This document shows, one piece after another, positions 24,867 through 64,000 of a DNA stretch of 64,000 bases. Below the pieces are notes generated by a model, which was given only the letters and a program-made list of their open reading frames with translations, made no database searches and had not been told where the DNA came from. The stretch comes from Pecten maximus. Taxonomy: Eukaryota. The stretch is from assembly GCF_902652985.1 (NCBI RefSeq), contig NC_047016.1:52886001-52950000 (forward strand), read 5' to 3'. The position numbers and the translations under genes were made by a program. How positions within the stretch are numbered: the stretch's first letter is position 1; every line of letters begins with the position of its first letter.

Positions 24867-27800
24867 TCATGAACAGCGACAGACAGTCGACGGACAATGT
24901 GGAGGTACATGGTTACACGTGCTGTCACACCAGGAATCCGTGGCGACAATAGATACGGAAACACATGTCCGGCTACCGCTAGAGGGCGCTGGAGTTGTAG
25001 ATGGCGTGGTTGTCGTTGGCGTTGTTATCCGTGTTGCTGTGTTGGCTTCAGTTGTTGTCTGGACTTGATTTCCTGACGTAGGAATCCTTTCTGTTGTGGT
25101 TAAAATGGCTGCTGGTTTACCTGATGTTGATGTTTTTAAAATGGACGACAAAGTAGTATATATCTTAGTTTCTCTAGCTGTAGTGGGGGTCGAGTCAGTT
25201 ATTGTCGCCTTTGAATCTGTTGTTTTAACAGGTGCCGCTGTTGAAGGTGTTGTTTTTACAGGTGTCGGTGTTGAAGGTGTCGTTTTTACAGGTGTCGTTG
25301 TCCTACTTGTCGCTGATGTAGTGGGCGCTGTGTTGACTACTGCTCTATTTGAAATAGCTATATCTGAGCATGCATAGAATTCTTCTTGTGGTCCAAATCC
25401 TAAACCGTTTCCATTTTCATCAGTGCCCCAACTATTTCCTGAAATTACAAACATAAAATGTGAAATTTTAATTACTTAATAATTGTAAAAACAAACATTT
25501 GTTATAGCCATGGACATGCCAGTTCTTTGCAGTCAATTGAAAACAGAAATCTGTGACATCCACAAAGATAAATCGATGAGAACAAAATTGCAAAAACTAA
25601 TAACATCAAAAACTATTGGTTTACAGCACAATTCTGACTTTTACAGAATTATACATATCCGCTATTGGTTTCTCAAATTAAGAATTCTTTCTCTTTCAAA
25701 TCATTTAAGCATCGTCCTACGTGACATGCGTTATATTTAACTATGAAATTAGTTACATGGTTTTCACAAAAAAGTACCATTTTATAGATAATTTATTTAA
25801 TGATGATAATAACACATGCGATATAAAAAGTTATTTCATGGAAAATATGGCTACTTTTAAGTTATCACCTGTGAAAAAAAGGACCTAACATATCACACTA
25901 GCTTACCTGTATGGTATCGCCATTGAATGACACACTGGGAACACGTGACGTTCGATGGCAGGTCCAAAGCGATTGTTATATTACCAGGCTTTTTCCCGAT
26001 TTGATGTTTTGTCTCTCCTGTATTCGAGTTTGGAAGTAAATATTTTAGACACTCTTTTGTGATGGGTTTGGCCACATCGTTGTTTTCACAGAGACGGAAT
26101 TCAAAGAATCCGAGATGATTAGAAGTTATCTCGACGGTGATGTTGATGGTCGAACCCTTGGTATAATATTTTACGATAACACCCTTTGCATATTTTCCCC
26201 CAGCCTCGTTTTCCCTTGGATGTGGCTGGTCATAAGGGTCTCCGCAAACGCCACACTTGCCCCCGAGACTTTGTTGATGCTACAAAAGAAATTAAGAGAT
26301 ATGTCAACCCCATGCTGAATATACGGAACTGGAACTTTATAGAGAAGACAACAAAATGGCTCAGAGAGGCTCCCAAGCCTAACAGAAGTGTTCGATGGCA
26401 ATAAAAAGTGATGATATGTTTAAACACTTCAATGTAGTTAACTCTGTGGAAGGATTTGTGAAAAACATTGAACTGAGTTAAAGCTATTGTCATAAAATTA
26501 TAGCTACTGTAACGCCTACATCCTACAGACTGCCTGTTACAATAGATAAATGATGACGACAATAGTGTAGTTGTTATATCTAAGTTATATCTAATTAATA
26601 GTTTGGTTTGTTTTTGTTTAACGTCCTATTAACAGCCAGGGTCATTTAAAGACGTGCCAAGTTTTGGAGGTGGGGGGAAGCCGGAGTACCCGGAGAAAAA
26701 CCACCGGGCTACGGTCAGTACCTGGCAACTGCCCCACGTAGGTTTTGAACTCGCAACCCAGAGGTGGAGGGCTAGTGATAAAGTGTCGGTACACCTTAAC
26801 CACTCGGCCACCACGGCCCCATAATCTTATTAATACCAACACATGAAAAACAATAATAGCAGCGCCATTAAAATGATCACGTATCAAACAGGGAAATGTG
26901 TACCAAATATGGAAGGGGAACACGATATTCGTTCTTTGTGAACAGCTTAATTCTCTGGAGGGTGGTACATAATTACTCGTTTTCGTTTATATAGCCTAGT
27001 AGTGTATAAGGTAAGATTGACTAGGTACACGTGTCCCGATGGAGTATCGAACTTCCTTGTACACAGACCCCATGCGTTTAGTTAAGGAATATCATATTTC
27101 ATTTAACCATGCCCGAGTTACATCCGGGTCGACAGGTGTGACTATTTGTATGTAAAATAAGTCAACGAGAAGTCTACTGTTAACATGTAAGTCGATATAC
27201 ATGTTTGTATATCAATTATGTTTTTGTTGAGACTAAAAAGTCGGCTATTTTAAGGTGAAACAATCCCAGAACTATTAGATATGGCGAATACAACCATTAC
27301 AACACCGACTATAATGTTTTTACTTTTATTTAGCTCTCTGTAATCAAATACAAAAGGTTGTCGCTTTAGAAACAAAAGAGAGACACCATCGTTAGTAATT
27401 TCTTTTGAATGTTCTACCGTTTTTCTAATTTTTTCCTTGTGTGTCATTTTTTTTATGTTTGATAGATATCAATACAACTAAAATACAATTTTATTTGACA
27501 TTTAACCCCGCAATATGGATATCATCATGGTTATTTATCAAACAGTATACAGNNNNNNNNNNNNNNNNNNNNNNNNNNNNNNNNNNNNNNNNNNNNNNNN
27601 NNNNNNNNNNNNNNNNNNNNNNNNNNNNNNNNNNNNNNNNNNNNNNNNNNNNNNNNNNNNNNNNNNNNNNNNNNNNNNNNNNNNNNNNNNNNNNNNNNNN
27701 NNNNNNNNNNNNNNNNNNNNNNNNNNNNNNNNNNNNNNNNNNNNNNNNNNNNNNNNNNNNNNNNNNNNNNNNNNNNNNNNNNNTTTAATCAACTTACTGC

Positions 27801-45904: not shown

Positions 45905-48900
45905 ATGGTTTTTGGTAGCTTGGTATTGGTTTTCTGTATATGGATGAATTTCGTCCCAGATGTTGTTCGTGGAAACAGCCGGATGTTTGAACTTCTCGGG
46001 AGAGATGTCAAGCAGGGGGATGGCATTGCTACACATGTTGGCTTTCAAGACAACGGACTAAGCCGTAGTGAACAGAACGTAAAGTATTTTAATTTGAAAA
46101 AATTAAACCTACTTTTATATCGAGATTAAGATGTTTTGTCAGCGTTAAAATATTTTGTTGTCTTAATCATAATTCTATACACCTCTATGCAAAATCATCA
46201 TGTTTGGCTATAAATAACTCCTTGTCCTTACTGAAGTCAACTTGTTTTGAGAAAAATGACGTAATGAGGTAAAACTGATATTTCTCATCAGTGTTTATCG
46301 ATGAATGTGACTACTGATAGCAGATTATTCCGGGTTTATTAAAAGAGAAAAGCTGTAATAAATCTCCTGTTATCTTGATTACTAGAAATCTTTAGAGGTC
46401 TCTAATGGAGCTTGTGGATTATGCAGAAACCCATTGGGACAAGGTGGAAAGCAAAACGAAACTTATGAAACAATTTTCCCAGAGATAACTTCAGAAGGCA
46501 ATATCATGTGGACGATCATCGGAATCAAAATACAGATTACATCCGACAGCGACGGTTTCCTCGAGTTCTTTCTTTCTGAAACTGACGTGAAACAAAGAAA
46601 TACTATGAACTGTTTGAAACATTTATTGGTTAATCCGGAGACGGGAGGGACAAGATACCCTGTTACAGCCTCTCAACAGTACATCGCTGTGTCTGCCAAG
46701 CTGCCCGAGAACGTCACGTGTTCCCAGTGTGTCTTACAGTGGAGGTACGCCACAGGTAAGTGTTATCATAGTCACGTCTCCCCCGTGTGTCTTACAGTGG
46801 AGGTACCACACAGGTAAGTGTTGTCAGAGTCACGTGTTCCTAGTGTGTCTTACATTGGAGGTACCACAAAGGTAAGTGCTGTCAGAGTCACGTGTTCCTA
46901 GTGTGTCTTACAGTGGAGGTACCACACAGGTAAGTGCTGTCAGAGTCACGTGTTCCTAGTGTGTCTAAGAGAAGAAGTACTACACAGGTAAGTGTTATCA
47001 TATTCACGTGTCCCCCGTGTGTCTTACAGTGGAGGTACCACACAGGTAAGTGTTATCAGTCACGTGTTCCTAGTGTGTCTTACATTGGATGTACCACACA
47101 GGTAAGTGTTATCATAGTCACGTATCCCCCGTGTGTCTTACAGTGGAGGTACCACACAGGTAAATGTTATCAGTCACGTGCTTCCAGTGTGTCTTACTGT
47201 GGAGGTACCACACAGGTAAGTGCTGTCAGAGTCACGTGTTCCTAGTGTGTCTTACAGTGGAGGTACCACAAAGGTAAGTGCTGTCAGAGTCACGTGTTCC
47301 TAGTGTGTCTTAGAGTGGAGGTACCACACAGGTAAGTGCTGTCAGAGTCACGTGTTCCTAGTGTGTCTTACAGTGGAGGTACCACAAAGGTAAGTGCTGT
47401 CAGAGTCACGTGTTCCTAGTGTGTCTTACAGTGGAGGTACCACAAAGGTAAGTGCTGTCAGAGTCACGTGTTCTTAGTGTGTCTTAGAGTGGAGGTACCA
47501 CACAGATAAGTGTTATCAGTCACGTGCTCCCAGTGTGTTTTACAGAGGAGGTACCACACAGGTAAGTTTTATTAGAGTCACGTGTTCCTCGTGTGTTTTA
47601 CATTGGAGGTACCACACAGGTAATTTTTTTAGAGTCACGTGTTCCTCGTGTGTTTTACATTGGAGGTACCACACAGGTAAGTGCTGTCAGAGTCACGTGT
47701 TCCTAGTGTGTCTTAGAGTGGAGGTACCACACAGGTAAGTGTTATCAGAGTCACGTGTTCCTAGTCTGTCTTACAGTGGAGGTACCACACAGGTAAGTGT
47801 TATCAGTCACGTGTTCCTAGTGTGTCTTAGAGTGGAGGTACCACACAGGTAATTTTTTATAGAGTCACGTGTTCCTCGTGTGTCTTAGAGTGGAGGTACC
47901 ACACAGGTAAGTGCTGTCAGAGTCACGTGTTCCTAGTGTGTCTTAGAGTGGAGGTACCACAAAGGTAAGTGCTGTCAGAGTCACGTGTTCCTAGTGTGTC
48001 TTAGAGTGGAGGTACCACACAGGTAAGTGCTGTCAGAGTCACGTGTTCCTAGTGTGTCTTACAGTGGAGGTACCACACAGGTAAGTGCTGTCAGAGTCAC
48101 GTGTTCCTAGTGTGTCTTACAGTGGAGGTACCACAAAGGTAAGTGCTGTCAGAGTCACGTGTTCCTAGTGTGTCTTAGAGTGGAGGTACCACACAGGTAA
48201 GTGCTGTCAGAGTCACGTGTTCCTAGTGTGTCTTACAGTGGAGGTACCACAAAGGTAAGTGCTGTCAGAGTCACGTGTTCCTAGTGTGTCTTAGAGTGGA
48301 GGTACCACACAGGTAAGTGCTGTCAGAGTCACGTGTTCCTAGTGTGTCTTACAGTGGAGGTACCACAAAGGTAAGTGCTGTCAGAGTCACGTGTTCCTAG
48401 TGTGTCTTACAGTGGAGGTACCACAAAGGTAAGTGCTGTCAGAGTCACGTGTTCCTAGTGTGTCTTACAGTGGAGGTACCACAAAGGTAAGTGCTGTCAG
48501 AGTCACGTGTTCTTAGTGTGTCTTAGAGTGGAGGTACCACACAGATAAGTGTTATCAGTCACGTGCTCCCAGTGTGTTTTACAGAGGAGGTACCACACAG
48601 GTAAGTTTTATTAGAGTCACGTGTTCCTCGTGTGTTTTACATTGGAGGTACCACACAGGTAATTTTTTTAGAGTCACGTGTTCCTCGTGTGTTTTACATT
48701 GGAGGTACCACACAGGTAAGTGCTGTCAGAGTCACGTGTTCCTAGTGTGTCTTAGAGTGGAGGTACCACAAAGGTAAGTGCTGTCAGAGTCACGTGTTCC
48801 TAGTGTGTCTTAGAGTGGAGGTACCACACAGGTAAGTGCTGTCAGAGTCACGTGTTCCTAGTGTGTCTTACAGTGGAGGTACCACAAAGGTAAGTGCTGT

Positions 48901-51900
48901 CAGAGTCACGTGTTCCTAGTGTGTCTTACAGTGGAGGTACCACAAAGGTAAGTGCTGTCAGAGTCACGTGTTCCTAGTGTGTCTTACAGTGGAGGTACCA
49001 CAAAGGTAAGTGCTGTCAGAGTCACGTGTTCCTAGTGTGTCTTAGAGTGGAGGTACCACACAGATAAGTGTTATCAGTCACGTGCTCCCAGTGTGTTTTA
49101 CAGAGGAGGTACCACACAGGTAAGTTTTATTAGAGTCACGTGTTCCTCGTGTGTTTTACAGTGGAGGTACTACACAGGTAAGTTTTATTAGAGTCACGTG
49201 TTCCTCGTGTGTTTAACAGTGGAGGTACCACACAGGTAAGGGAAACCATTTAACTATCATTTTATTGCATTTTTATGCTAAAAACAAACCTAAAAACATA
49301 AAAACATCGCAATTGAATCGTTTTCTGCTGTCATCGAATAATCTGTTCATGGATAGCTAATATCAAGTGAGTATTTTGTCAAAAACCTAGCCTGAATATT
49401 TCAGAAATACAGGAAAAAATATCCATTTTCATTACAATTGGAAATTATCGGCAAGTTTCAATGAGATGAGGCTCGCTCTCATTGGTAAAAAATCATTGTA
49501 AAATCTTATATCCTTACTGCTCATCGCTGCAATCAAAATATAAGTTTATCTTTTTGATAATAAGGGATTGCTTTAATGCCATTTTGATATCACATCCCTG
49601 ATCCGCCCGAGAATCTTGAAAGCAGCCTGAGGGCTGACCTAAAGGCTCAAGGGCGGCTGGTTAGAGGTCCGATTTCAAAAATGGTCATATTATAAAGTTT
49701 TATCCATATTTTTATATTTTTTTTCAAACACAACAAACATGACCTCACATTTTGATCTGTGAAAATCGTCACGTTCAATTGTGTTTTTCTCAACATTTTC
49801 ATATTTTTAACAAACGGTTCTCTGTCATCTGCATCCTCAAATCGATCCAATTAAACACGTCTTCTGCTATACATGTCCATCAGTCATCAGGGTCAACAAT
49901 TCCAGCTTCTAGCTCGCCTAATATCCCCCTCCCTCGATCATCTCTAAAAAAATAGACATCAAAACGCTAGGAACTGTACAAAGGTGTTCCACCATGTTCT
50001 CTTTTAGGTCCCATCCTCTTTAGCATCTTCAAAAATGACATCTTCCACTTTACGCAACACAGCAATCTATACATCTATCCAGATGACAATACTATAGAAA
50101 TTCACACACATCCTGGGACATCGTAAAAAAGCACTACAAACAGAAAGCAACTCACTTATTCACTGGTTCTCAGATAACCACATAAAGGCTAATCCAAGCA
50201 ATGCCAGTAGTTAACAAACCCCAACAATAAAACATCACCATTCAGATTGGTAATAACACTATATAATGTGAACCAGAAGTTAAACTTTTAAAGGTTACAT
50301 TAGATTTCAAGCATAAGTTCTTCACATATTTAGCAAATTATCTGCAAAAAAGTATCAAGACATCGTAACACACAAAAACGCATTGGCAAACACCTAAGCA
50401 GACTTGGCAAACACACGATATCACTCTTTTATCATTTCAAACTTCAATTTTTGTCCATTCACATGGCAGTTCTAAGGAACAACCAACGCAAAAAAAAAAA
50501 AAAAAAAAAATGTAAAAAAAATCAAGAAAGGGCACTCAAATAATAAACAGGAAAATACGCACGAAATTTAACTAGCCCGTTCAAAATTACCATCACTCAG
50601 AATAAGGAGACTCAGGAATTTGGCAATAGAAGTCTACAAAATCAAAACAAATGCCAACATACCTACATGACGTAATCAATATAACAGAAAAAGTATACAC
50701 ATTCAGATATCACAACACTGCAGATATACCACATGTTAGGACAGCAAACTATGACAAACACTCCTTTCAGTCAGAAACACCTAAAATCTAGAATGCACTA
50801 CCAAACCACTTCTGAACAACGACTTCACTCACACAATTCAAATCACTGACAAACAGCTGGTATGGGCCACAATGCAAATACAGCACGTGCAGACAAAACA
50901 CAGACATACCCACACACACAACATCCATTTTTTTGTAAGAGTCTAAAGGAACTTAATGCTTAATCAAATATCCATATTGTCAAGTGATTCTGCTATATCA
51001 AAGATATAACTCAACGAAATATATTTCCAAACAATCATTTTCTGCAAGCATTGATCTTTTTAATCAGGTAAATACATTTGTGTGCTTTTATGCTTTATTT
51101 ATTTTTATTTAATTTATTTTGTATTTGTGCATGTGTTTTACTGTTGCTATCGTTTTTAATAGCTAATTAGAGTTAATGTTTTTTATAATACGTACCGACT
51201 ATAAATAAAGTTTGAATTGATTTGAACCGAATTGAATCACCAGTTGGCATTGCTGTTTATATTTATGCAGACCACAAGTTCAACCCACACTAATAAGAAA
51301 AGTAAAAACGGAAACGGCGTTATTCGGGAACTTACATTACATTTGTGAAGTTTTATTATTTTGCATGTACATTGTTAGTGTTTTCCTGTTATAAAAAACG
51401 GCTTATTCAACTATTTGTTTATTTTTACATTAAAAGCGGTAAAGATAAGCCATAATGGCAAAATCCGGATTTTTACAGGGATGGTGATAACACTTTCGAA
51501 GGGGTTTGGTATCACTTTCAAGGGAGTGTGATAATACCATCAGAGGGTGTGACATTACTATCAGAGGGTGTGATATTACCATCAGAGGGTGTGATATTAC
51601 TATCAGAGGGTGTGATATTACCATCAGAGGGTGAGATATCACCATCAGAGGGTGTGATATTACCATCAGAGGGTGTGATATTACCATCAGAGGGTGTGAT
51701 ATTACCATCAGAGGGTGTGATATTACCATCAGAGGGTGTGATATTACTATCAGAGGGTGTGATATTACCATCAGAGGGTGTGGTATTACCATCAGAGGGT
51801 GTGATATTACTATCAGAGGGTGTGATATTACTATCAGAGGGTGGGATATTACCATCAGAGGGTGTGATATTACCATCAGAGGGTGTGATATTACCATCAG

Positions 51901-54900
51901 AGGGTGTGACATTACTATCAGGTGGTGTGATATTACCATCAGAGGGTGTGATATTACCATCAGAGGGTGTGGTATTACCATCAGAGGGTGTGATATTACC
52001 ATCAGTGGTCGTGATATTACCATCAGAGGGTGTGATATTACCATCAGAGGGTGGGATATCACCATCAGTGGGTGTGATATGACCATTAGAGGGTGTGATA
52101 TTACCATCAGTTGGTGTGATATTACCATTAGAGGGTGTTATATCACCATCAGTGGGTGTGATAATACCATTAGAGGGTGTGATATTACCATCAGTTGGTG
52201 TGATATTACCATTAGAGGGTGTTATATTACCATCAGAGGGTGTGATATGATCATCAGAAGGTGTTATATTACCATCAGTTGGTGTGATATTACCATCAGA
52301 GGGTGTGATATGATCATCAGAGGGTGGGATATTACCATCAGAGTTTGTGATATCACCATCAGGTGGTGTGATATTACCATCAGAGGGTATGATATTACCA
52401 TCAGAAGGTGTGCTATTACCATCAGTTGGTGTGATATTACCATCAGAGGGTGTGATATTACCATCAGAGGGTGTGATATTACCATCAGATGTTGTGATAT
52501 CACCATCAGAGGGTGTGATATTACCATCAGAGGGTGTGATATGATCATCAGAGGGTGGGATATTACCATCAGAGTTTGTGATATCACCATCAGGTGGTGT
52601 GATATTACCATCAGAGGGTATGATATTACCATCAGAAGGTGTGCTATTACCATCAGTTGGTGTGATATTACCATCAGAGGGTGTGATATTACCATCAGAG
52701 GGTGTGATATTACCATCAGAGGGTGTGATATTACCATCAGAGGGTGTGATATTACCATCAGTTGGTGTGATATTACCATCAGAGGGTGTGATATTACCAT
52801 CAGTGGTCGTGATATTACCATCAGAGGGTGTGATATTACCATCAGTGGTCGTGATATTACCATCAGAGGGTGTGATATTACCATCAGAGGGTGTGATATT
52901 ACCATCAGAGGGTGTGATATTACTATCAGAGGGTGTAATATTACCATCAGAGGGTGTGATATTACCATCAGTGGTCGTGATATTACCATCAGAGGGTGTG
53001 ATATTACCATCAGAGGGTGTGATATTACTATCAGAGGGTGTAATATTACCATCAGAGGGTGTGATATTACCATCAGAGGTCGTGATATTACCATTAGAGG
53101 GTGTGATATTACCATCAGAGGGTGTGATATTACCATTAGTGGGTGTGATATTACCATCAGAGGGTGTGATATTACCAGGACTGATGTTAATTTGTGATAA
53201 TTGTAGACATATCGCATATACAAAAAGTGTAGTAAATTTATGATACATTTCTATATTTCACCGGGAAAAATGCAATAATGTTTTATCATATACTGTACGG
53301 GTGTTAATGGCCTTGGTAAGTAAAATATGTTATAGAAATATTAATATCAATAATGCAGAAAGCCTGTGGAATCCGATATCGAGCTTTGTTATATTAGTAA
53401 AATAATATACTCTCGATCTAAGCATTATAACACTAATCCATTTGATATAAGCTTGTTATCCGAAATGTTATAAATGTAAAAAAAAAAAAAAAAAAAAGTT
53501 TGTGAAATATAATTAAAGGAATGAAACGATTGCATCATTTCGTTTTACTGTTGTAGGAAACCAGAAATTTAATTCTGAAGAGATATGTGAAGCATGCGAG
53601 GACCAGACAAAACTCTATGCATGTTCATATGTTGCTAAGACGTCAGGAGACACTGATCTGTCTCCTCTCACTGCCGACACAGCTTTCTCTTCTGATATTA
53701 ACAAACGATCCACTAAAGTATGTGTGTCTATTGTTGACGGAGTTCACGACATCTGGTGCGACCGCAACTGTAATCACAAGCCGCCATATTGCCCGATTAC
53801 TTTGTGTAAATGCACTACAACCTCAACTGCAACATCTATCACCAGCACCATATCTTCATCTACCAGCATCTCAACCAGTCCTTCCTCGACCCGGAGCAGT
53901 GTCACTTCCAGTCCTTCCTCGACCCGGAGCAGTGTCACTACCAGTCCATCCTCGACCCGGAGTAGCATCACTACCAGTCCATCCTCGACCCGGAGTAGCA
54001 TCACTACCAGTCCATCCTCGACCCGGAGTAGCATCACTACCAGTCCATCCTCCAGCTGGAGTAGCATCACTACCAGTCCATCCTCGAGCTGGAGCAGCAT
54101 CACTACTAGTCCTTCCATTGGCTGGATCAGTGTCTCTACCAATCCTTCATATAGAAAAAGTACTACCACCTCTACTACCACTCCATTCAGTAACTCTCTT
54201 TCAATTTCTACAAGGACCAGTCCGTCATCTAGTAGTTCCACGACCAGTTCGTATAGTTCTACTATTTCCGTTTCCAAGACTCCAACTACTTACTCGGCGC
54301 GTGGATGTATATCACTTTACCGCAAACGTTCAGGATTCCTGGTGTGAAGTAAACTGCAATTACGTACCGCCATTTTGTCCAGTTTCACTATGTAAATGTT
54401 TAATTATCCTCTCAACTACTACAACCACTACCATGCCTTCAACCACCACTGCCACTCCTTCTACAACAAGTACCACTCCCTCCACAACAAGTACCACTCC
54501 CTCCACTACAACTACCACTCCCTCCACTACAAGTACCACTCCTTCTACAACAAGTACCACTCCCTCCACTACAAGTACCACTCCCTCCACTACAAGTACC
54601 ACTCCCTCCACTACAACTACCACTCCCTCCACTACAACTACCACTCCTTCTACAACAACTACCACTCCCTCCACTACAAGTACCACTCCCTCCACTACAA
54701 GTACCACTCCCTCCACTACAACTTCCACTCCCACCACTACAACTACCATTCCCTCCACTACAAGTACCACTCCCTCCACTACAAGTACCACTCCCTCCAC
54801 TACAAGTACCACTCCTTCTACAACAACTACCACTCCCTCCACTACAAGTACCACTCCTTCTACAACAACTACCACTCCCTCCACTACAAGTACCACTCCT

Positions 54901-56039
54901 TCTACAACAACTACCACTCCCTCCACTACAAGTACCACTCCTTCTACAACAACTACCACTCCCTCCACTACAAGTACCACTCCTTCTACAACAAGTACCA
55001 CTCCCTCCACTACAACTACCACTCCCTCCACTACAAGTACCACTCCTTCTACAACAAGTACCACTCCCTCCAGTACAAGTACCACTCCCTCCACTACAAG
55101 TACCACTCCCTCCACTACAACTACCACTCCCTCCACTACAAGTACCACTCCTTCTACAACAACTACCACTCCCTCCACTACAAGTACCACTCCTTCTACA
55201 ACAAGTACCACTCCCTCCACTACAAGTACCACTCCCTCCACTACAACTACCACTCCCTCCACTACAAGTACCACTCCCTCCACTACAACTACCACTCCCT
55301 CCACTACAACTACCACTCCCTCCACTACAACTACCACTCCCTCCACTACAAGTACCACTCCCTCCACTACAAGTACCACTCCCTCCACTACAAGTACCAC
55401 TCCTCCAATACAACTACCACTCCCTCCACTACAAGTACCACTCCCTCCACTACAAGTACCACTCCCTCCACTACAAGTACCACTCCCACCACTACAACTA
55501 CCACTCCCTCCACTACAACTACCACTCCCTCCACTACAACTACCACTCCCTCCACTACAACTACCACTCCCTCCACTACAAGTACCACTCCCTCCACTAC
55601 AAGTACCACTCCCTCCACTACAAGTACCACTCCCACCACTACAACTACCACTCCCTCCACTACAAGTACCACTCCCTCCACTACAACTACCACTCCCTCC
55701 ACTACAAGTACCACTCCCTCCACTACAACTACCACTCCCTCCACTACAAGTACCACTCCCTCCACTACAACTACCACTCCCTCCACTACAAGTACCACTC
55801 CCTCCACTACAATTACCACTCCCTCCACTACAAGTACCACTCCCTCCACTACAAGTACCACTCCCACCACTACAACTACCACTCCCTCCACTACAACTAC
55901 CACTCCTTCTACAACAACTACTCCTTCCTCTGCCGGCTGCGTATCCCTTTTCCCTAGTGTTCCTAATTCTTGGTGTGAATTGAATTGTAACCACTCACCG
56001 CCCAATTGTCCAGGATATTTGTGTCAATGTACAACCTAA
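45905..56039 (+). CDS. AA15 LPMO-derived gene lacking the histidine brace (LPMO-C), with three 6-Cys modules and mucin-like Ser/Thr stalks, ~1008 aa if two 1-nt indels are corrected; exons 45905-46078, 46386-46755, 53557-56039; either a non-catalytic protein or a pseudogene
   Basis: Same exon phases and near-identical exon 1/2 lengths as paralogues. Signal peptide, then NSRMFELLGR (vs HGRMLDPPGR), TSDSDG (vs TSNHEG) and QTKLYACS (vs QEEFYACS). A +1 T at ~54316 and a -1 C at ~55402 interrupt exon 3; AATAAA at 56214. Confidence 0.75.
46713..49240 (+). repeat. 58-bp minisatellite derived from the LPMO-C exon 2/intron 2 junction, ~43 copies
   Basis: Unit GTCACGTGTTCCTAGTGTGTCTTACAGTGGAGGTACCACACAG|GTAAGTGCTGTCAGA (starts at 47231 and 47289) = last 43 nt of exon 2 + first 15 nt of the intron. 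Confidence 0.97.
49930..51237 (+). mobile_element. 5'-truncated, decayed CR1/L2-type LINE (RT C-terminal half + 3' UTR) in LPMO-C intron 2
   Basis: KGVPPCSLLGPILFSIFKNDIFHF...LYIYPDDNT resembles GVPQGSxLGPxLF...YADD; terminal W.GP.C motif (~50858); AATAAA followed by a (TTGAA)n-like tail (~51202-51237). Confidence 0.8.
51527..53177. repeat. 21-bp minisatellite (GTGTGATATTACCATCAGAGG), ~78 copies, LPMO-C intron 2
   Basis: Direct inspection. Confidence 0.97.
53874..54120 (+). repeat. 33-bp coding repeat (TSPSSTRSSIT), ~7 copies, first stalk of LPMO-C
   Basis: ACCAGTCCATCCTCGACCCGGAGTAGCATCACT units. Confidence 0.9.
54420..55925 (+). repeat. 21-bp coding repeat (TPSTT[S/T]T), ~70 copies, mucin-like stalk of LPMO-C
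   Basis: ACTCCCTCCACTACAA(G/C)TACC units between the 2nd and 3rd Cys modules. Confidence 0.95.
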
Positions 56040-60868: not shown

Positions 60869-63800
60869 ATGATGCCACTCCGATTGTCACTCGCTTGTGC
60901 TATGTTGATGAATATCCTAACTGTCGTGCATGGCCACGGCCGAATGTTGGATCCTCCCGGCAGAAGCAGCATGTGGAGAGTTGGCTTTAATACACCTGTA
61001 AATTTCGATGACAACGGCCTCAACTGTGGATACCGAAAGGTAGTTCCTTCATTAAAAAGCTGTGATTGAGAATCAATCTCATTATGGGTTTATTTTGATG
61101 TTCGACTGTAATGTATTGGTTTGGCAAAGACAACCTTTCTTGATTTCCGTACCTGTCCTTCACACAATGTTTGATCTAGTATCACTGACGAATGCTGCAG
61201 GAAAGTTATGTATTCGTGTCCAAGTCAAAATCAAAATAAAGACCAGACTATTTCATCATACGGTTATCGACTGTGAAATAGAAAAAAAAAAAAAAAAAAA
61301 GTGGACAGACGCAATATATCAATTCAGTAAACAAAAATAAAAATACAAATCAAGCCAAAAATTAAACGCGCACCGCATTGGAAATTATATAGCCCCAATA
61401 TTTGTTTCATAACCGACTGTCTTCTAGGCGTTCATGATATGACGATATAGGTACAATAGTTTCCTGTTCGGTTTGTTGTTATTTCATATCAATATCACCA
61501 AACCGTGCCCCTCTGTTTGCTGTTTAATTAATTATGTTGTCGTACGAGGCTGATTATATTGAAGAGCTTATCAAAAAAGCAAGAGAGACTTTGTAAAGCA
61601 CTTCAATTTTAACTTTAGTTATCTTAACGTTTAAGTGTTACATTTGAATAAAAACATTGTTGGCCATGTTGATCCGGTATATCATGTAAAACCCGAAATC
61701 AAGGAAGTTCATTTTCTTAAACGAGTCACTTATCTGTATCTTTACATATAATAATCACCAACGCGAACAGCTTACAAATAAGTTTTATGGTAACCGTGAT
61801 TCTTTCAATTTTTCCATTGCTATTCAAAGGCTAAGAATGATGTCGTTTGATTAAGACCACAGCGAAGTTTTATTGTCGGACTCTTATTTAGAAATATTGT
61901 ATTGCCTTATGCGATATGAATTATAACATATTTGATATTGTTGATATTTGTAATAGTTCCGTTGTCATCTACGTAACTCTTATGTGAGTTTGTGACTCAG
62001 ATTTGTATAGTGGGTGTCGTGGTGACCTAGATTTGTATGGTGGGTGTCTTAGTGAACTAGATTTGTATGGTGGGTGTCGTAGTGAACTAGATTTATATAG
62101 TGGGTGTCGTAGTGACATGGATTTGTATAATTGGTGTCGTCTTGACCTAGATTTGTATGGTTTGTGTCGTAGTGACCTAGATTTGTATAGTGGGTGTCGT
62201 AGTGACCTAGATTTGCATGGTGGGTGTCGTAGTGACCTAGATTTGTATAGTGGGTGTCGTAGTGACCTAGATGTGTATGGTGGTGTCGTAGTGACCTAGA
62301 TTTGTATGGTTAGTGTCGTAGTGACCTAGATTTATTTAGTGGGTGTCGTAGTGACCTAGATTTGTATGGTGGGTGTCGTAGTGACATAGATTTGTATGGT
62401 GGGTGTCGTAGTGACCGAGATGTGTATGGTGGTGTCATAGTGACCTAGATTTGTATGGTGGTGTCGTAGTGACCTAGATTTGTATGGTTGGTGTCGTAGT
62501 GACCTAGATTTGTATGGTGGGTGTCGTAGTGACCTAGACTTGTGGCGTCGATGAAGCAGAATACGCTAGCTTCTTCCGTAACACCTGGCCGTGTTCTCCT
62601 TAAAAAATGAAATGTTTGTTGATAGTTAACCTTCGTTGGATTGCTTAAGACTTTGTATTATGGTTTTATTACCACGTCAGTATGATTTTTGGGGATGTAT
62701 TTCATTATCATGAGTGTCACTTTATATACATTGTGGCGATATAGCATTTCTAACAAAAATGTTTATATTTTGACTTATTTTAGCAACCTCTAGACTTCTT
62801 CGGTGGCAATTGTGGCGTATGTGGGGACCCATCAGGACAAAATCCGAAGGAGAACGAGGCTGGGGGAAAATATGCAACGGGGATCATCTCAAAGTATTAT
62901 AAAATGGGGGAGAACATCAATATAAAAATACATATAACCTCAAATAATGAAGGTTTTTTCGAGTTCCGCCTCTGTGAAAATAATGACGTTAAAAAAAGAA
63001 TAACAAAGAGCTGCTTGAAACATTTATTGGTTAATCCGGAGACGGGAGAGACAAGATACCCTGTTACAGCCTCTCAACAGTACATCGCTGTGTCTGCCAA
63101 GCTGCCCGAGAACGTCACGTGTTCCCAGTGTGTCTTACAGTGGAGGTACCACACAGGTAAGTGTTATCAGAGTCACGTGTTCCTAGTGTGTCTTACAGTG
63201 GAGATACCACACATGTAAGTGTTATCAGAGTCACGTGTCCCCCGTGTGTCTTACAGTGGAGATACCACACATGTAAGTGTTATCAGAGTCACGTGTTCCT
63301 AGTGTGTCTTACAGTGGAGATACCACACAGATAAGTGTTGTCAGTCACGTGTTCCCCGTGTGTTTTACAGTGGAGATACCACACAGGTAAGTGTTATCAG
63401 AGTCACGTGTTCTCAGTGTGTATTACAGTGGAGGTTCCACACAGATAAGTGTTATCAGTCACGTGTTCCCCGTGTGTATAAGAGCGAATGTTCCACACAG
63501 ATAAGTGTTATCAACACACATCATTTTATCATCAATATGGTATTTGACAGTAGATATATAAGAGAAGAATAGTAGCCACTGTAAAGACAAATGAAAGCAA
63601 AAAGTGAATTTATAATGAGTTTATTTTAGTGTTGCATGACTGGATTGTCAGTCATGGCATTATGTTGAACTTGATAAAATTTCGAATAAGATTAGCGTTC
63701 AGTTATGTTACAAGAAGCTTATGATTTTTGTCTTTCGTCTTTGTTCTCTCTTTTAAACGAAGAAAAAGTGATTGAACAAAATGTAGTTGTAACCTTTCAT

Positions 63801-64000
63801 AACTGATACGTGGTTTGCTTGATATCACAGGAAAAAATGGCGGGATCTGTAAAACATGTGTCGACCAGGAAGAGTTTTATGCGTGTTCGGATATAGCCAT
63901 CAAAGACAGTGATTCACCGATCACGGAGGAAGACTCCGGTATATCTCCCCTTATAGCAGATACGGCGTTCATCCCTGACTCTAACCCGCGATCTCCTGGA
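60869..64000 (+). CDS. AA15-type LPMO-like gene (LPMO-D) with His2->Asn; exons 60869-61039, 62784-63156, 63831->64000 (runs off the window)
   Basis: 22-aa signal peptide, HGRMLDPPGRSSMWRVGFNTPVNFDDNGLNCG, CGVCGDP, ENEAGGKY, TSNNEGFFEFRLC, TCSQCVLQWRY, ICKTCVDQEEFYACSDI; frame open to the window end. Confidence 0.92.
61993..62540. repeat. 30-bp minisatellite (GATTTGTATGGTGGGTGTCGTAGTGACCTA), ~18 copies, LPMO-D intron 1
   Basis: Direct inspection. Confidence 0.95.
63114..63513 (+). repeat. 58-bp exon/intron-junction minisatellite of LPMO-D, ~7 copies (same family as 46713-49240)
   Basis: GTCACGTG...CAGTGGAG(G/A)TACCACACA(G/T)(G/A)TAAGTGTTATCAGA units starting inside exon 2. Confidence 0.93.

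What the first reader, a model, noticed from the sequence alone, without database searches (positions are those of the whole stretch)
45905..56039. LPMO-C: secreted brace-less pseudo-LPMO with three 6-Cys modules and a ~500-aa mucin stalk
Seen: all three Cu-site positions and the second-sphere Glu are replaced (H->N, H->S, EEF->TKL), and two Cys are lost (LNCG->LSRS, RLC->FLS). Even so, exons 1-2 have no stop or frameshift despite only ~40-45% amino-acid identity to D over the 5' part of exon 2 (manual count), and the signal peptide and splice sites are intact. The C-terminus expanded from one to three 6-Cys modules (~53721, ~54306, ~55938), each keeping all six Cys and the Trp, separated by Ser/Thr repeats. 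A dibasic site (NKR|S) precedes module 1. Inference: the ORF was kept under selection as a multivalent, peritrophin/mucin-like polysaccharide cross-linker built on an LPMO chassis.
Basis: partly seen in the sequence, partly recalled or inferred. Interest (0 to 1): 0.85.

Follow-up and report, generated by a model that had tools for sequence, protein, structure and literature searches.

The report
Scallop mucin with vestigial LPMO domain
In the king scallop, one copy of a copper enzyme gene (AA15 LPMO) has lost its whole metal site and lets its enzyme-derived head drift freely, while it keeps its secretion signal, its reading frame, three small six-cysteine modules and a long mucin-like stalk, so it looks like a live secreted mucin-type gene with a vestigial enzyme domain, not an enzyme and probably not a dead gene.

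Summary
The sequence features are real. Copy C (window 45905-56039; Pecten maximus) has Asn, Ser and Leu at the positions of His1, His91 and Tyr184 of the solved AA15 enzyme. It lacks two cysteines that are invariant in 87 of 87 homologues. Its splice sites and signal peptide are intact, and it carries three six-cysteine modules and about 510 residues of TTPSTTS repeats.

One of the two exon-3 frameshifts, an extra T at 54316-54319 inside module 2, is an assembly error: contigs from three runs in three studies all lack it. The second, a missing C near 55403, could not be tested.

A codon branch model gives omega 0.97 (95% CI about 0.47-2.5) for C's N-domain, against 0.12 for its relatives. Even so the frame is open (P about 0.004 under neutrality) and all indels are in frame. 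The modules keep 30 of 30 family-invariant positions, the N-domain only 25 of 58.

So selection keeps secretion, frame and modules, not an "LPMO chassis". C belongs to a scallop clade of brace-less AA15-like proteins with 2-5 modules and mucin linkers, found in four genera. Expression is only suggested. This is a new variant of a known kind, of moderate interest.

The parts
45905..46078 (+). Exon 1. The signal peptide is 45905-45973 and ends V-R-G. The mature part starts with Asn instead of His1, and LNCG has become LSRS.
   Evidence: The hydrophobic core has a 10-residue Kyte-Doolittle mean of 2.74.
46079..46385 (+). Intron 1, 307 nt (734 nt in B, 1744 nt in D). Not alignable to D.
46386..46755 (+). 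Exon 2, LPMO-derived core. Ser sits at the His91 position, and FRLC has become FFLS.
   Evidence: Pfam LPMO_10 E 8.4e-5; 5MSZ E 2.4e-8
46620..46800 (+). Gene-conversion tract shared with copy D, 97-100% nucleotide identity. It runs into the junction minisatellite.
   Evidence: sliding identity; blastn
46713..49240 (+). 58-bp minisatellite x44 in intron 2, born from the exon 2/intron junction. Each unit carries a copy of the donor site.
   Evidence: repeated peptide pieces
51526..53177 (+). 21-bp tandem repeat x79 inside intron 2.
53557..53714 (+). Start of exon 3. It holds the last LPMO strand, with Q-T-K-L in place of Q-E-E-F/Y, then a linker with S-P-L-x-A-D-T-A-F and N-K-R-S.
53721..53813 (+). 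Six-Cys module 1.
   Evidence: A contig of run X5 lies on 53649-53893.
53814..54305 (+). Ser-rich linker, including the 33-bp repeat x7.6 at 53865-54116.
54306..54399 (+). Six-Cys module 2. The assembly has one T too many in the T run at 54316-54319; without it the module is in frame with module 1.
   Evidence: (contigs of X1, X3 and X6 all lack one letter there)
54403..55930 (+). Mucin-like stalk of about 72 units of 21 nt (TTPSTTS), about 510 residues. One C of a CCC run is missing near 55402-55404; this second frameshift was not tested.
55938..56039 (+). Six-Cys module 3 (55938-56030) and the stop codon (56037-56039). It is in frame only if the shift near 55403 is an assembly error.

Best explanation
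Copy C is a secreted mucin-type gene, live or only very recently disabled, that descends from the scallop clade of AA15 LPMO-like proteins without a histidine brace.

The predicted product is about 1,000 residues. In order it has a signal peptide, an LPMO-derived head of about 190 residues, module 1, a Ser-rich linker, module 2, an O-glycosylatable TTPSTTS stalk of about 510 residues, and module 3.

The head cannot hold copper, because both brace histidines and the axial aromatic residue are gone. It is no longer constrained at the amino-acid level. It survives as an in-frame spacer, because a stop or frameshift there would remove the modules downstream.

The parts under selection are the signal peptide, the open frame and the three six-Cys modules. 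The modules are predicted to be small strand-helix-strand domains, with C-x3-C on the helix and C-x-C on the last strand.

Shown: the residue losses, the neutral rate in the head, the conserved modules, and the false frameshift. Inferred: that the protein is made, that it is glycosylated, and that the modules bind an extracellular partner such as chitin or another matrix glycan.
For: Metal site and cysteines:
- Both are lost.

Codon branch model (106 unconverted codons, 7 sequences):
- Omega on the C branch is 0.72-0.97 under three tree topologies.
- It does not differ from 1 (p 0.36-0.93) but differs from the background of 0.12 (p about 1e-7 to 7e-6).
- The profile interval is about 0.47-2.5.

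Frame preservation:
- At the estimated dS of 0.43, only 0.4% of neutral simulations stay free of stops.
- Exon 1 aligns to D without gaps at the nucleotide level.
- The three larger indels are multiples of 3.
- Introns and flanks are no longer alignable.

Modules:
- They keep 30/30 family-invariant positions, against 25/58 in the head (Fisher p 1.4e-8).
- dS to every other module is at least about 0.5, and above 1 or saturated for most pairs, so they are not recent conversions.

Frameshift 1:
- It is absent from contigs of three runs in three studies.
- The assembly is PacBio CLR/wtdbg2 with short-read polishing (PMC7191990).

Relatives with the same plan:
- Ylistrum has 3 modules plus a mucin tail of about 300 residues in one open exon.
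- Mizuhopecten has 5 modules.
- Argopecten and Pecten D have 2.

Module fold: the AlphaFold model has pLDDT 89.
Against: - Transcription is not shown. The only holders besides DNA runs are four runs of one 2015 study whose RNA nature is a guess. Their contigs cover parts of exon 3 only, and none crosses a splice junction. The 13 other RNA or probable-RNA runs listed for the species hold none of it.
- The second frameshift is untested. If it is real, module 3 is out of frame.
- No annotated protein for C was found in the 5.8-billion-protein collection within the length ranges searched.
- An omega near 1 could also be a mixture of positive and purifying selection.
- The codon model is my own implementation, run on 106 codons with an uncertain tree.
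- No binding partner of the module is known.
Confidence: 0.55

Rival explanations
1. The brace-less N-domain is itself a selected, folded, non-catalytic polysaccharide-binding domain. It was neofunctionalised by a burst of adaptive change, and it works together with the modules as a multivalent cross-linker.
For: - The frame is kept open.
- Some core strand motifs survive, such as I-K-I-x-I-T-S and G-F-x-E-F.
- Relatives without the brace have an N-domain under strong purifying selection (omega 0.12), so a non-catalytic role for this fold exists in the clade.
- An omega of about 1 averaged over a branch can hide positive plus purifying selection.
Against: - Only 25 of 58 positions invariant in six relatives are kept.
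- The P-P-x-R-S-S-M-W-R motif is lost.
- Two cysteines present in 87/87 homologues are lost.
- Omega at or below about 0.45 is excluded.
- The best-kept stretch lies next to or inside the conversion tract with D, so its similarity may be copied rather than selected.
Confidence: 0.15
2. C is a pseudogene. It was released from selection as a whole, and the intact-looking parts are what has not yet decayed or what conversion from D refreshed.
For: - Catalytic residues and cysteines are lost.
- The head evolves at the neutral rate.
- One frameshift is still unexplained.
- No protein model was found.
- Most RNA runs hold nothing.
- There is no C-like remnant or gene between the B-like and D-like genes of Argopecten.
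Against: - No stop in 129 neutral-rate codons (P about 0.004), and only in-frame indels.
- Splice sites, ATG and signal peptide are intact.
- 30/30 invariant module positions are kept, although the modules are old.
- The one frameshift that could be tested is an assembly error.
- Conversion covers only about 180 nt.
- At most, the gene died very recently.
Confidence: 0.2
3. The shift near 55403 is real and the gene is live. It would then encode a two-module protein whose last 190 or so residues are a Pro/Leu-rich tail read from the shifted repeat, with module 3 left in the 3' UTR.
For: The shifted frame stays open to 55983. The variant unit also carries a substitution (ACT to AAT), so it is not a plain copy of its neighbours.
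Against: - Module 3 keeps all ten invariant positions, and its closest relative is the third module of the Ylistrum gene.
- The error is of the same kind (a homopolymer length) as the one proven false 1.1 kb upstream.
- Short-read polishing is weakest inside a 1.5-kb array of 21-nt units.
Confidence: 0.1

Closest known systems
Insect group I LPMO15-1 (TcLPMO15-1, LmLPMO15-1; Qu et al. 2022, PMC9156745)
   Same: It has a signal peptide, an AA15 domain and a C-terminal stretch with repeated six-Cys units, C-X15-C-X3-C-X6-9-C-X4-C-X1-C. The scallop modules have the same pattern with a shorter first spacer (X11-13). 81 of 228 AA15 homologues fetched here carry 1-3 such units.
   Different: The insect proteins keep the histidine brace and are needed for cuticle chitin turnover. 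They have two adjacent repeats and no mucin stalk. C has no brace, three modules spread along about 700 residues of Ser/Thr-rich repeats, and an unconstrained AA15-derived head.
TdAA15A, Thermobia domestica AA15 LPMO (PDB 5MSZ; Sabbadin et al. 2018, PMC5823890)
   Same: Exon 2 of C is homologous to it (E 2.4e-8). It has the same fold family as copies A and B of the cluster (B: E 1.7e-25).
   Different: His1, His91 and Tyr184 are Asn, Ser and Leu in C. C has 8 of the 10 conserved cysteines. No copper site is possible.
Scallop brace-less AA15-like clade: Pecten copy D, Argopecten XP_069120050, Ylistrum LOC132543699/LOC132543700, Mizuhopecten OWF46338
   Same: These are the closest relatives. His91 is replaced in all of them (Asn, Asp, Ser, Arg), and His1 is also replaced in Ylistrum (Gln) and Mizuhopecten (Arg). 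They carry 2-5 six-Cys modules with Thr/Pro-rich linkers. In Ylistrum a three-module gene lies upstream of a two-module gene, as C lies upstream of D.
   Different: Their N-domains are strongly conserved (omega 0.12). C's evolves at the neutral rate and has also lost the axial residue, the two glutamates and two cysteines.
LsAA9B, fungal AA9 LPMO-like protein lacking the histidine brace (Frandsen et al. 2019 JBC, as cited in PMC10354095)
   Same: It is a precedent for a secreted member of an LPMO family that has lost the copper site and is retained as a non-enzyme.
   Different: It belongs to another family (AA9) and another kingdom. It is a folded single domain with a solved structure, and it has no modules or stalk.
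Cysteine-stabilised alpha/beta mini-domains (defensin-type Cys pattern) and secreted PTS mucins
   Same: The module has C-x3-C on the predicted helix and C-x-C on the predicted last strand, which is the signature spacing of that motif (established knowledge). The stalk has the Pro/Thr/Ser tandem-repeat make-up of mucin domains.
   Different: No structural match was found, and disulfide connectivity is unknown. No antimicrobial or glycan-binding activity is known for the module. Glycosylation is inferred only.

Membership tests
AA15 lytic polysaccharide monooxygenase (active enzyme) | His as first residue of the mature protein (His1) | tested here: not met
   Asn follows the V-R-G cleavage site. 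Copy B aligns H1 to H1 of 5MSZ.
AA15 lytic polysaccharide monooxygenase (active enzyme) | Second brace histidine (His91 of TdAA15A) | tested here: not met
   Ser sits at that column.
AA15 lytic polysaccharide monooxygenase (active enzyme) | Axial Tyr/Phe (Tyr184) in the Q-E-E-Y/F motif | tested here: not met
   The motif reads Q-T-K-L in C.
AA15 lytic polysaccharide monooxygenase (active enzyme) | Ten conserved cysteines (five disulfides) | tested here: not met
   Eight are present. The two missing ones are present in 87/87 homologues (PMC5823890).
AA15 / LPMO_10 fold family (descent) | Significant sequence similarity to the family | tested here: met
   Pfam PF03067 scores 23.8 bits against a cut-off of 23. 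5MSZ matches at E 2.4e-8. There are 362 hits in the representative library.
AA15 lytic polysaccharide monooxygenase (active enzyme) | Copper binding and oxidative cleavage of chitin or cellulose | not testable with these tools
   This needs recombinant protein.
AA15-associated six-Cys repeat (LPMO15-1 type) | C-X11-15-C-X3-C-X6-9-C-X4-C-X1-C with Trp before the second Cys | tested here: met
   All three modules fit. Ten columns are invariant in 12 other modules, and C keeps 30/30 of them. The pattern is taken from PMC9156745.
Peritrophin-A / CBM14 chitin-binding domain | Match to PF01607 and its longer six-Cys spacing | tested here: not met
   There is no Pfam hit at E up to 10 for three modules. 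The module is 31 residues from first to last Cys.
Mucin-type (PTS) domain | Long tandem repeats rich in Pro/Thr/Ser in a secreted protein | tested here: met
   A 21-nt unit x71.5 is read as TTPSTTS. O-glycosylation itself is not testable here.
Pseudogene | Disabling stops or frameshifts in the real DNA | tested here: inconclusive
   The shift at 54316-54319 is an assembly error. The shift near 55403 was not tested. There is no stop elsewhere.
Pseudogene | Neutral evolution over the whole gene | tested here: not met
   Evolution is neutral in the head only. The modules are conserved, and the frame is kept.
Expressed gene | Spliced transcript | tested here: inconclusive
   Contigs of two probable RNA runs lie in exon 3, and none lies on the 379 nt of intron that was laid. 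No junction was seen, and the RNA nature of the runs is only guessed.

The most novel reading that the evidence does not exclude
Scallops, and possibly other bivalves, have turned an AA15 LPMO lineage into a family of non-catalytic, secreted matrix or mucus proteins. In this family the small six-Cys modules, strung on mucin stalks, are the working ligand-binding units, and the former enzyme domain is dispensable. Copy C would be the end point of this change: the enzyme domain has become a freely drifting in-frame spacer inside a gene that is still selected.
Probability: 0.3. Interest if true: 0.65.

Novelty: new variant of a known kind. Interest (0 to 1): 0.45.

Why it matters
LPMOs are studied almost only as copper enzymes. 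A clade of animal AA15-like proteins without the histidine brace, held under strong purifying selection in four scallop genera and built with 2-5 six-Cys modules, points to a non-oxidative role for this scaffold and for the uncharacterised Cys-rich repeat that insects also carry.

Copy C gives a within-gene contrast that makes this testable. The head evolves neutrally, while the modules and the frame are constrained. It therefore marks the modules, not the LPMO fold, as the part to express and assay.

It is also a caution for annotation. A homopolymer error in a long-read assembly makes a probably live gene look broken.

Tried and rejected
- **Spliced model.** The exons were never joined for a search or a fold.
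- **Annotated protein for C.** I searched the word-indexed collection with the module 2 region (candidates of 439-1396 residues) and with the start of exon 3 (144-458 residues). Both found nothing. An exact look-up of copy B's protein gave no contig, because records of this genome are withheld.
- **Representative search with exon 2.** The top hit and three others are unrelated repeat proteins. They match many times on a short D-G-F-x-E-F-like stretch and were rejected as composition or repeat artefacts.
- **Module fold.** Foldseek against the PDB and the wide VIA search gave no usable match (best Z 2.1). The Atlas gave no usable hit.
- **Disulfide partners of the two lost cysteines.** Co-loss among homologues was uninformative, because both are invariant.
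- **Module phylogeny.** It was unresolved, with supports of 15-57% apart from one pair. Orthology of C with the Ylistrum three-module gene stays 'probable'.
- **Second copy of the 3' end.** No haplotig was found in the assembly against which to check the second frameshift.
- **N-K-R-S as a convertase site.** An Arg followed by Ser or Thr occurs a few residues before module 1 in the other clade members, but only C has a dibasic pair. This was noted and not treated as evidence of cleavage.
- **Literature.** I found no paper on brace-less AA15 proteins in animals and none naming the scallop accessions.
Full report
**Where this is.** The window is scaffold C2:52886001-52950000 of a genome of 918,306,378 bases in 3,983 pieces. 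This is exactly the published Pecten maximus assembly (PMC7191990). Copies A and B of the cluster are identical to RefSeq proteins named for that species. The window holds four AA15-type genes:
- A on the minus strand, with exon 3 at 24867-25454.
- B at 36131-38840.
- C at 45905-56039.
- D from 60869, running past the window end. I read its exon 3 from the genome.

**Checking the observation.** The gene model follows from the sequence and from the exon boundaries of B, whose RefSeq protein confirms them:
- Exon 1 is 45905-46078.
- Exon 2 is 46386-46755.
- Exon 3 starts at 53557. Its donors, acceptors and phases are canonical.

I aligned the exons one by one to the solved Thermobia enzyme. Using B and A as intact guides, this fixes His1, His91 and Tyr184. 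C has Asn, Ser and Leu at these positions, and the two glutamates before the axial residue are Thr and Lys. The Cys of LNCG and the Cys of FRLC are missing. Both are present in all 87 full-length homologues I aligned.

Identity to D is 44% over the 5' part of exon 2 and 34% in mature exon 1. D is 82-94% identical to its Argopecten counterpart over the same stretches. The last 45 or so codons of exon 2 are 97-100% identical to D at the nucleotide level, which marks a conversion tract.

**The two frameshifts.** In the assembly, module 2 is split by one extra T in a T run at 54316-54319, and the frame then stops at 54347. About 1.1 kb further on, one C of a CCC run is missing near 55403, which returns the frame to that of module 3.

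I laid contigs of four public runs on 53178-54420, avoiding the long arrays. All three runs that cross the place lack exactly one letter there. They are X1, probably the sequenced animal; X3, from another study; and X6, from a third study. The first frameshift is therefore an error of the PacBio CLR/wtdbg2 assembly, and module 2 is in frame.

The only read-laying run was then spent. No second copy of the region exists in the assembly. The second shift is therefore untested. It is the same kind of error, and it sits inside a 1.5-kb array where short-read polishing is weakest, so I put about 3 to 1 on it being false too.

**Is it transcribed?** No holder is on record as RNA. Four runs of one 2015 study, guessed to be RNA, hold 21-32% of the sampled words of the exon. 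Their contig sets total only about 86 Mb, under a tenth of the genome, which fits transcriptomes better than genomic libraries.

Contigs of two of these runs lie on 53649-53893 and 54044-54420 and beyond. None lies on the 379 intron bases that were laid. The 13 other RNA or probable-RNA runs listed for the species hold nothing. I read this as suggestive of restricted, low expression. No splice junction was seen.

**What selection is acting on.** I fitted a codon model with a separate omega for the C branch. It is my own implementation of a Goldman-Yang type branch model with F3x4 frequencies. The data were the 106 unconverted codons (mature exon 1 and the first 72 codons of exon 2) from C, D, B and the D-type genes of Argopecten, Ylistrum (two) and Mizuhopecten.
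- The background omega is 0.12.
- The C branch gives 0.72-0.97 under three placements of C.
- This does not differ from 1 (p 0.36-0.93) but is far from the background (p from about 1e-7 to 7e-6).
- dN and dS are both about 0.43.
- The profile interval is roughly 0.47-2.5.

C keeps only 25 of the 58 positions that are invariant in the six other sequences.

Yet the frame is intact:
- At that divergence, only 0.4% of neutral simulations of the 129 codons stay free of stops.
- Exon 1 aligns to D without gaps at the nucleotide level.
- The three larger indels are 1, 4 and 7 codons.
- Introns and flanks have diverged beyond alignment.

In the same gene, the three modules keep all 30 of the 30 positions that are invariant in 12 other modules (Fisher p 1.4e-8 against the head). 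Their synonymous distance to every other module is at least about 0.5, and above 1 or saturated for most pairs, so conversion has not refreshed them.

The simplest reading is that the modules, with secretion, are what is selected. The head only has to stay in frame.

**The wider family.** C is not a lone oddity. Its closest relatives form a clade in which His91 is replaced everywhere: Asn in Pecten D, Asp in Argopecten, Ser in Ylistrum and Arg in Mizuhopecten. His1 is also replaced in Ylistrum (Gln) and Mizuhopecten (Arg). The rest of the domain is strongly conserved.

Reading their exon 3 from the fetched loci gives these module counts:
- Pecten D and Argopecten have two modules.
- One Ylistrum gene has three modules plus a mucin tail of about 300 residues, in a single open frame of 503 codons. 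Its RefSeq model is cut short.
- Mizuhopecten has five modules with Thr/Pro linkers. They are annotated there as a separate gene.

In Ylistrum the three-module gene lies upstream of a two-module gene on the same strand, as C lies upstream of D. C's third module is closest to the Ylistrum third module, and the nucleotide tree joins C to the Ylistrum/Mizuhopecten group with 77% support. Orthology is probable but not shown. Argopecten has no C-like remnant between its B-like and D-like genes.

Elsewhere in this genome, four more AA15 copies lack His91. So do 11 of 181 domain instances among the fetched homologues.

**What the module is.** It has no Pfam family. It matches the 'two six-cysteine internal repeats' described at the C-terminus of insect group I LPMO15-1, whose function is unknown and which are stated not to be CBM14 (PMC9156745). 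81 of 228 fetched homologues, from molluscs, crustaceans and mites, carry one to three.

AlphaFold on an alignment of 18 modules gives a confident model (pLDDT 89). It has a strand, a helix that carries C-x3-C, and a last strand that carries C-x-C. This is the spacing of cysteine-stabilised alpha/beta mini-domains. That comparison rests on general knowledge, and no structural hit backed it.

**Verdict.** The head is best seen as a vestigial domain.
- Best explanation: a live mucin-type gene with a decayed head, 0.55.
- A functional, neofunctionalised head: 0.15.
- A pseudogene: 0.2.
- A two-module product with a real second shift: 0.1.

Brace-less LPMO-like proteins are known in fungi (LsAA9B), and the Cys-rich repeat is known in insects. 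I found no report of a brace-less AA15 clade in animals. I therefore rate it a new variant of a known kind.

The spliced protein was never assembled for a search or a fold, so there is no model of C's whole head.

Noticed in passing
window 54316-54319: The reference assembly carries one T too many in a T run. Contigs of three public runs lack it. This is a residual long-read homopolymer error inside a coding exon.
   Followed up: yes
window 60869-64000 and L030 1-1700 (copy D): Copy D keeps His1 but has Asn at His91. It has two six-Cys modules and Thr/Pro-rich linkers. With its counterparts in Argopecten, Ylistrum and Mizuhopecten, it forms a brace-less AA15-like clade under strong purifying selection (omega about 0.12).
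   Followed up: partly
L028 11225-12736 (Ylistrum balloti): The RefSeq model XP_060063201 (250 aa) stops before the modules. The exon is in fact one open frame of 503 codons, with three six-Cys modules and a long TSTPTSV repeat.
   Followed up: partly
L029 10001-20259 (Mizuhopecten yessoensis): The model OWF46338 reads into an intron repeat. The neighbouring 752-residue 'gene' is the third exon of the same gene, with five six-Cys modules. Four of these are identical copies at a period of 411 nt.
   Followed up: partly
window 46713-49240 and 63114-63513: A 58-bp minisatellite made from the end of exon 2 plus the donor site occurs about 44 times in C and a few times in D. The unit length is not a multiple of 3, so use of a downstream donor would shift the frame.
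   Followed up: partly
loci L017, L020, L021, L022 (other scaffolds of the same genome): Four further AA15 exon-2 copies elsewhere in the genome have Ile, Leu, Met or Leu at the His91 position. Loss of the brace is therefore recurrent in this genome.
   Followed up: no
window 36500-36800 and 26642-26923: A short interspersed element is shared by intron 1 of copy B and the region next to copy A. In translation both read through a similar stretch ending in P-P-P-L-G-C-E-F.
   Followed up: no
window 31766-35423: About 3.6 kb of short tandem repeat between copies A and B is open in several frames on both strands.
   Followed up: no
window 51526-53177: A 21-bp tandem repeat x79 inside intron 2 of C is open in all frames. 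On the minus strand it reads as a long P-S-D-G-N-I-T repeat. No sign was seen that it is coding.
   Followed up: no
window 27553-27783 and 42205-42360: Two runs of N were left untouched.
   Followed up: no
one search hits P0001, P0005, P0006, P0015: Long repeat proteins score high against exon 2 of C. They match many times on the short stretch around S-D-G-F-L-E-F. This is a chance likeness to propeller-type repeats, which the weak PDB lectin hit also shows.
   Followed up: partly
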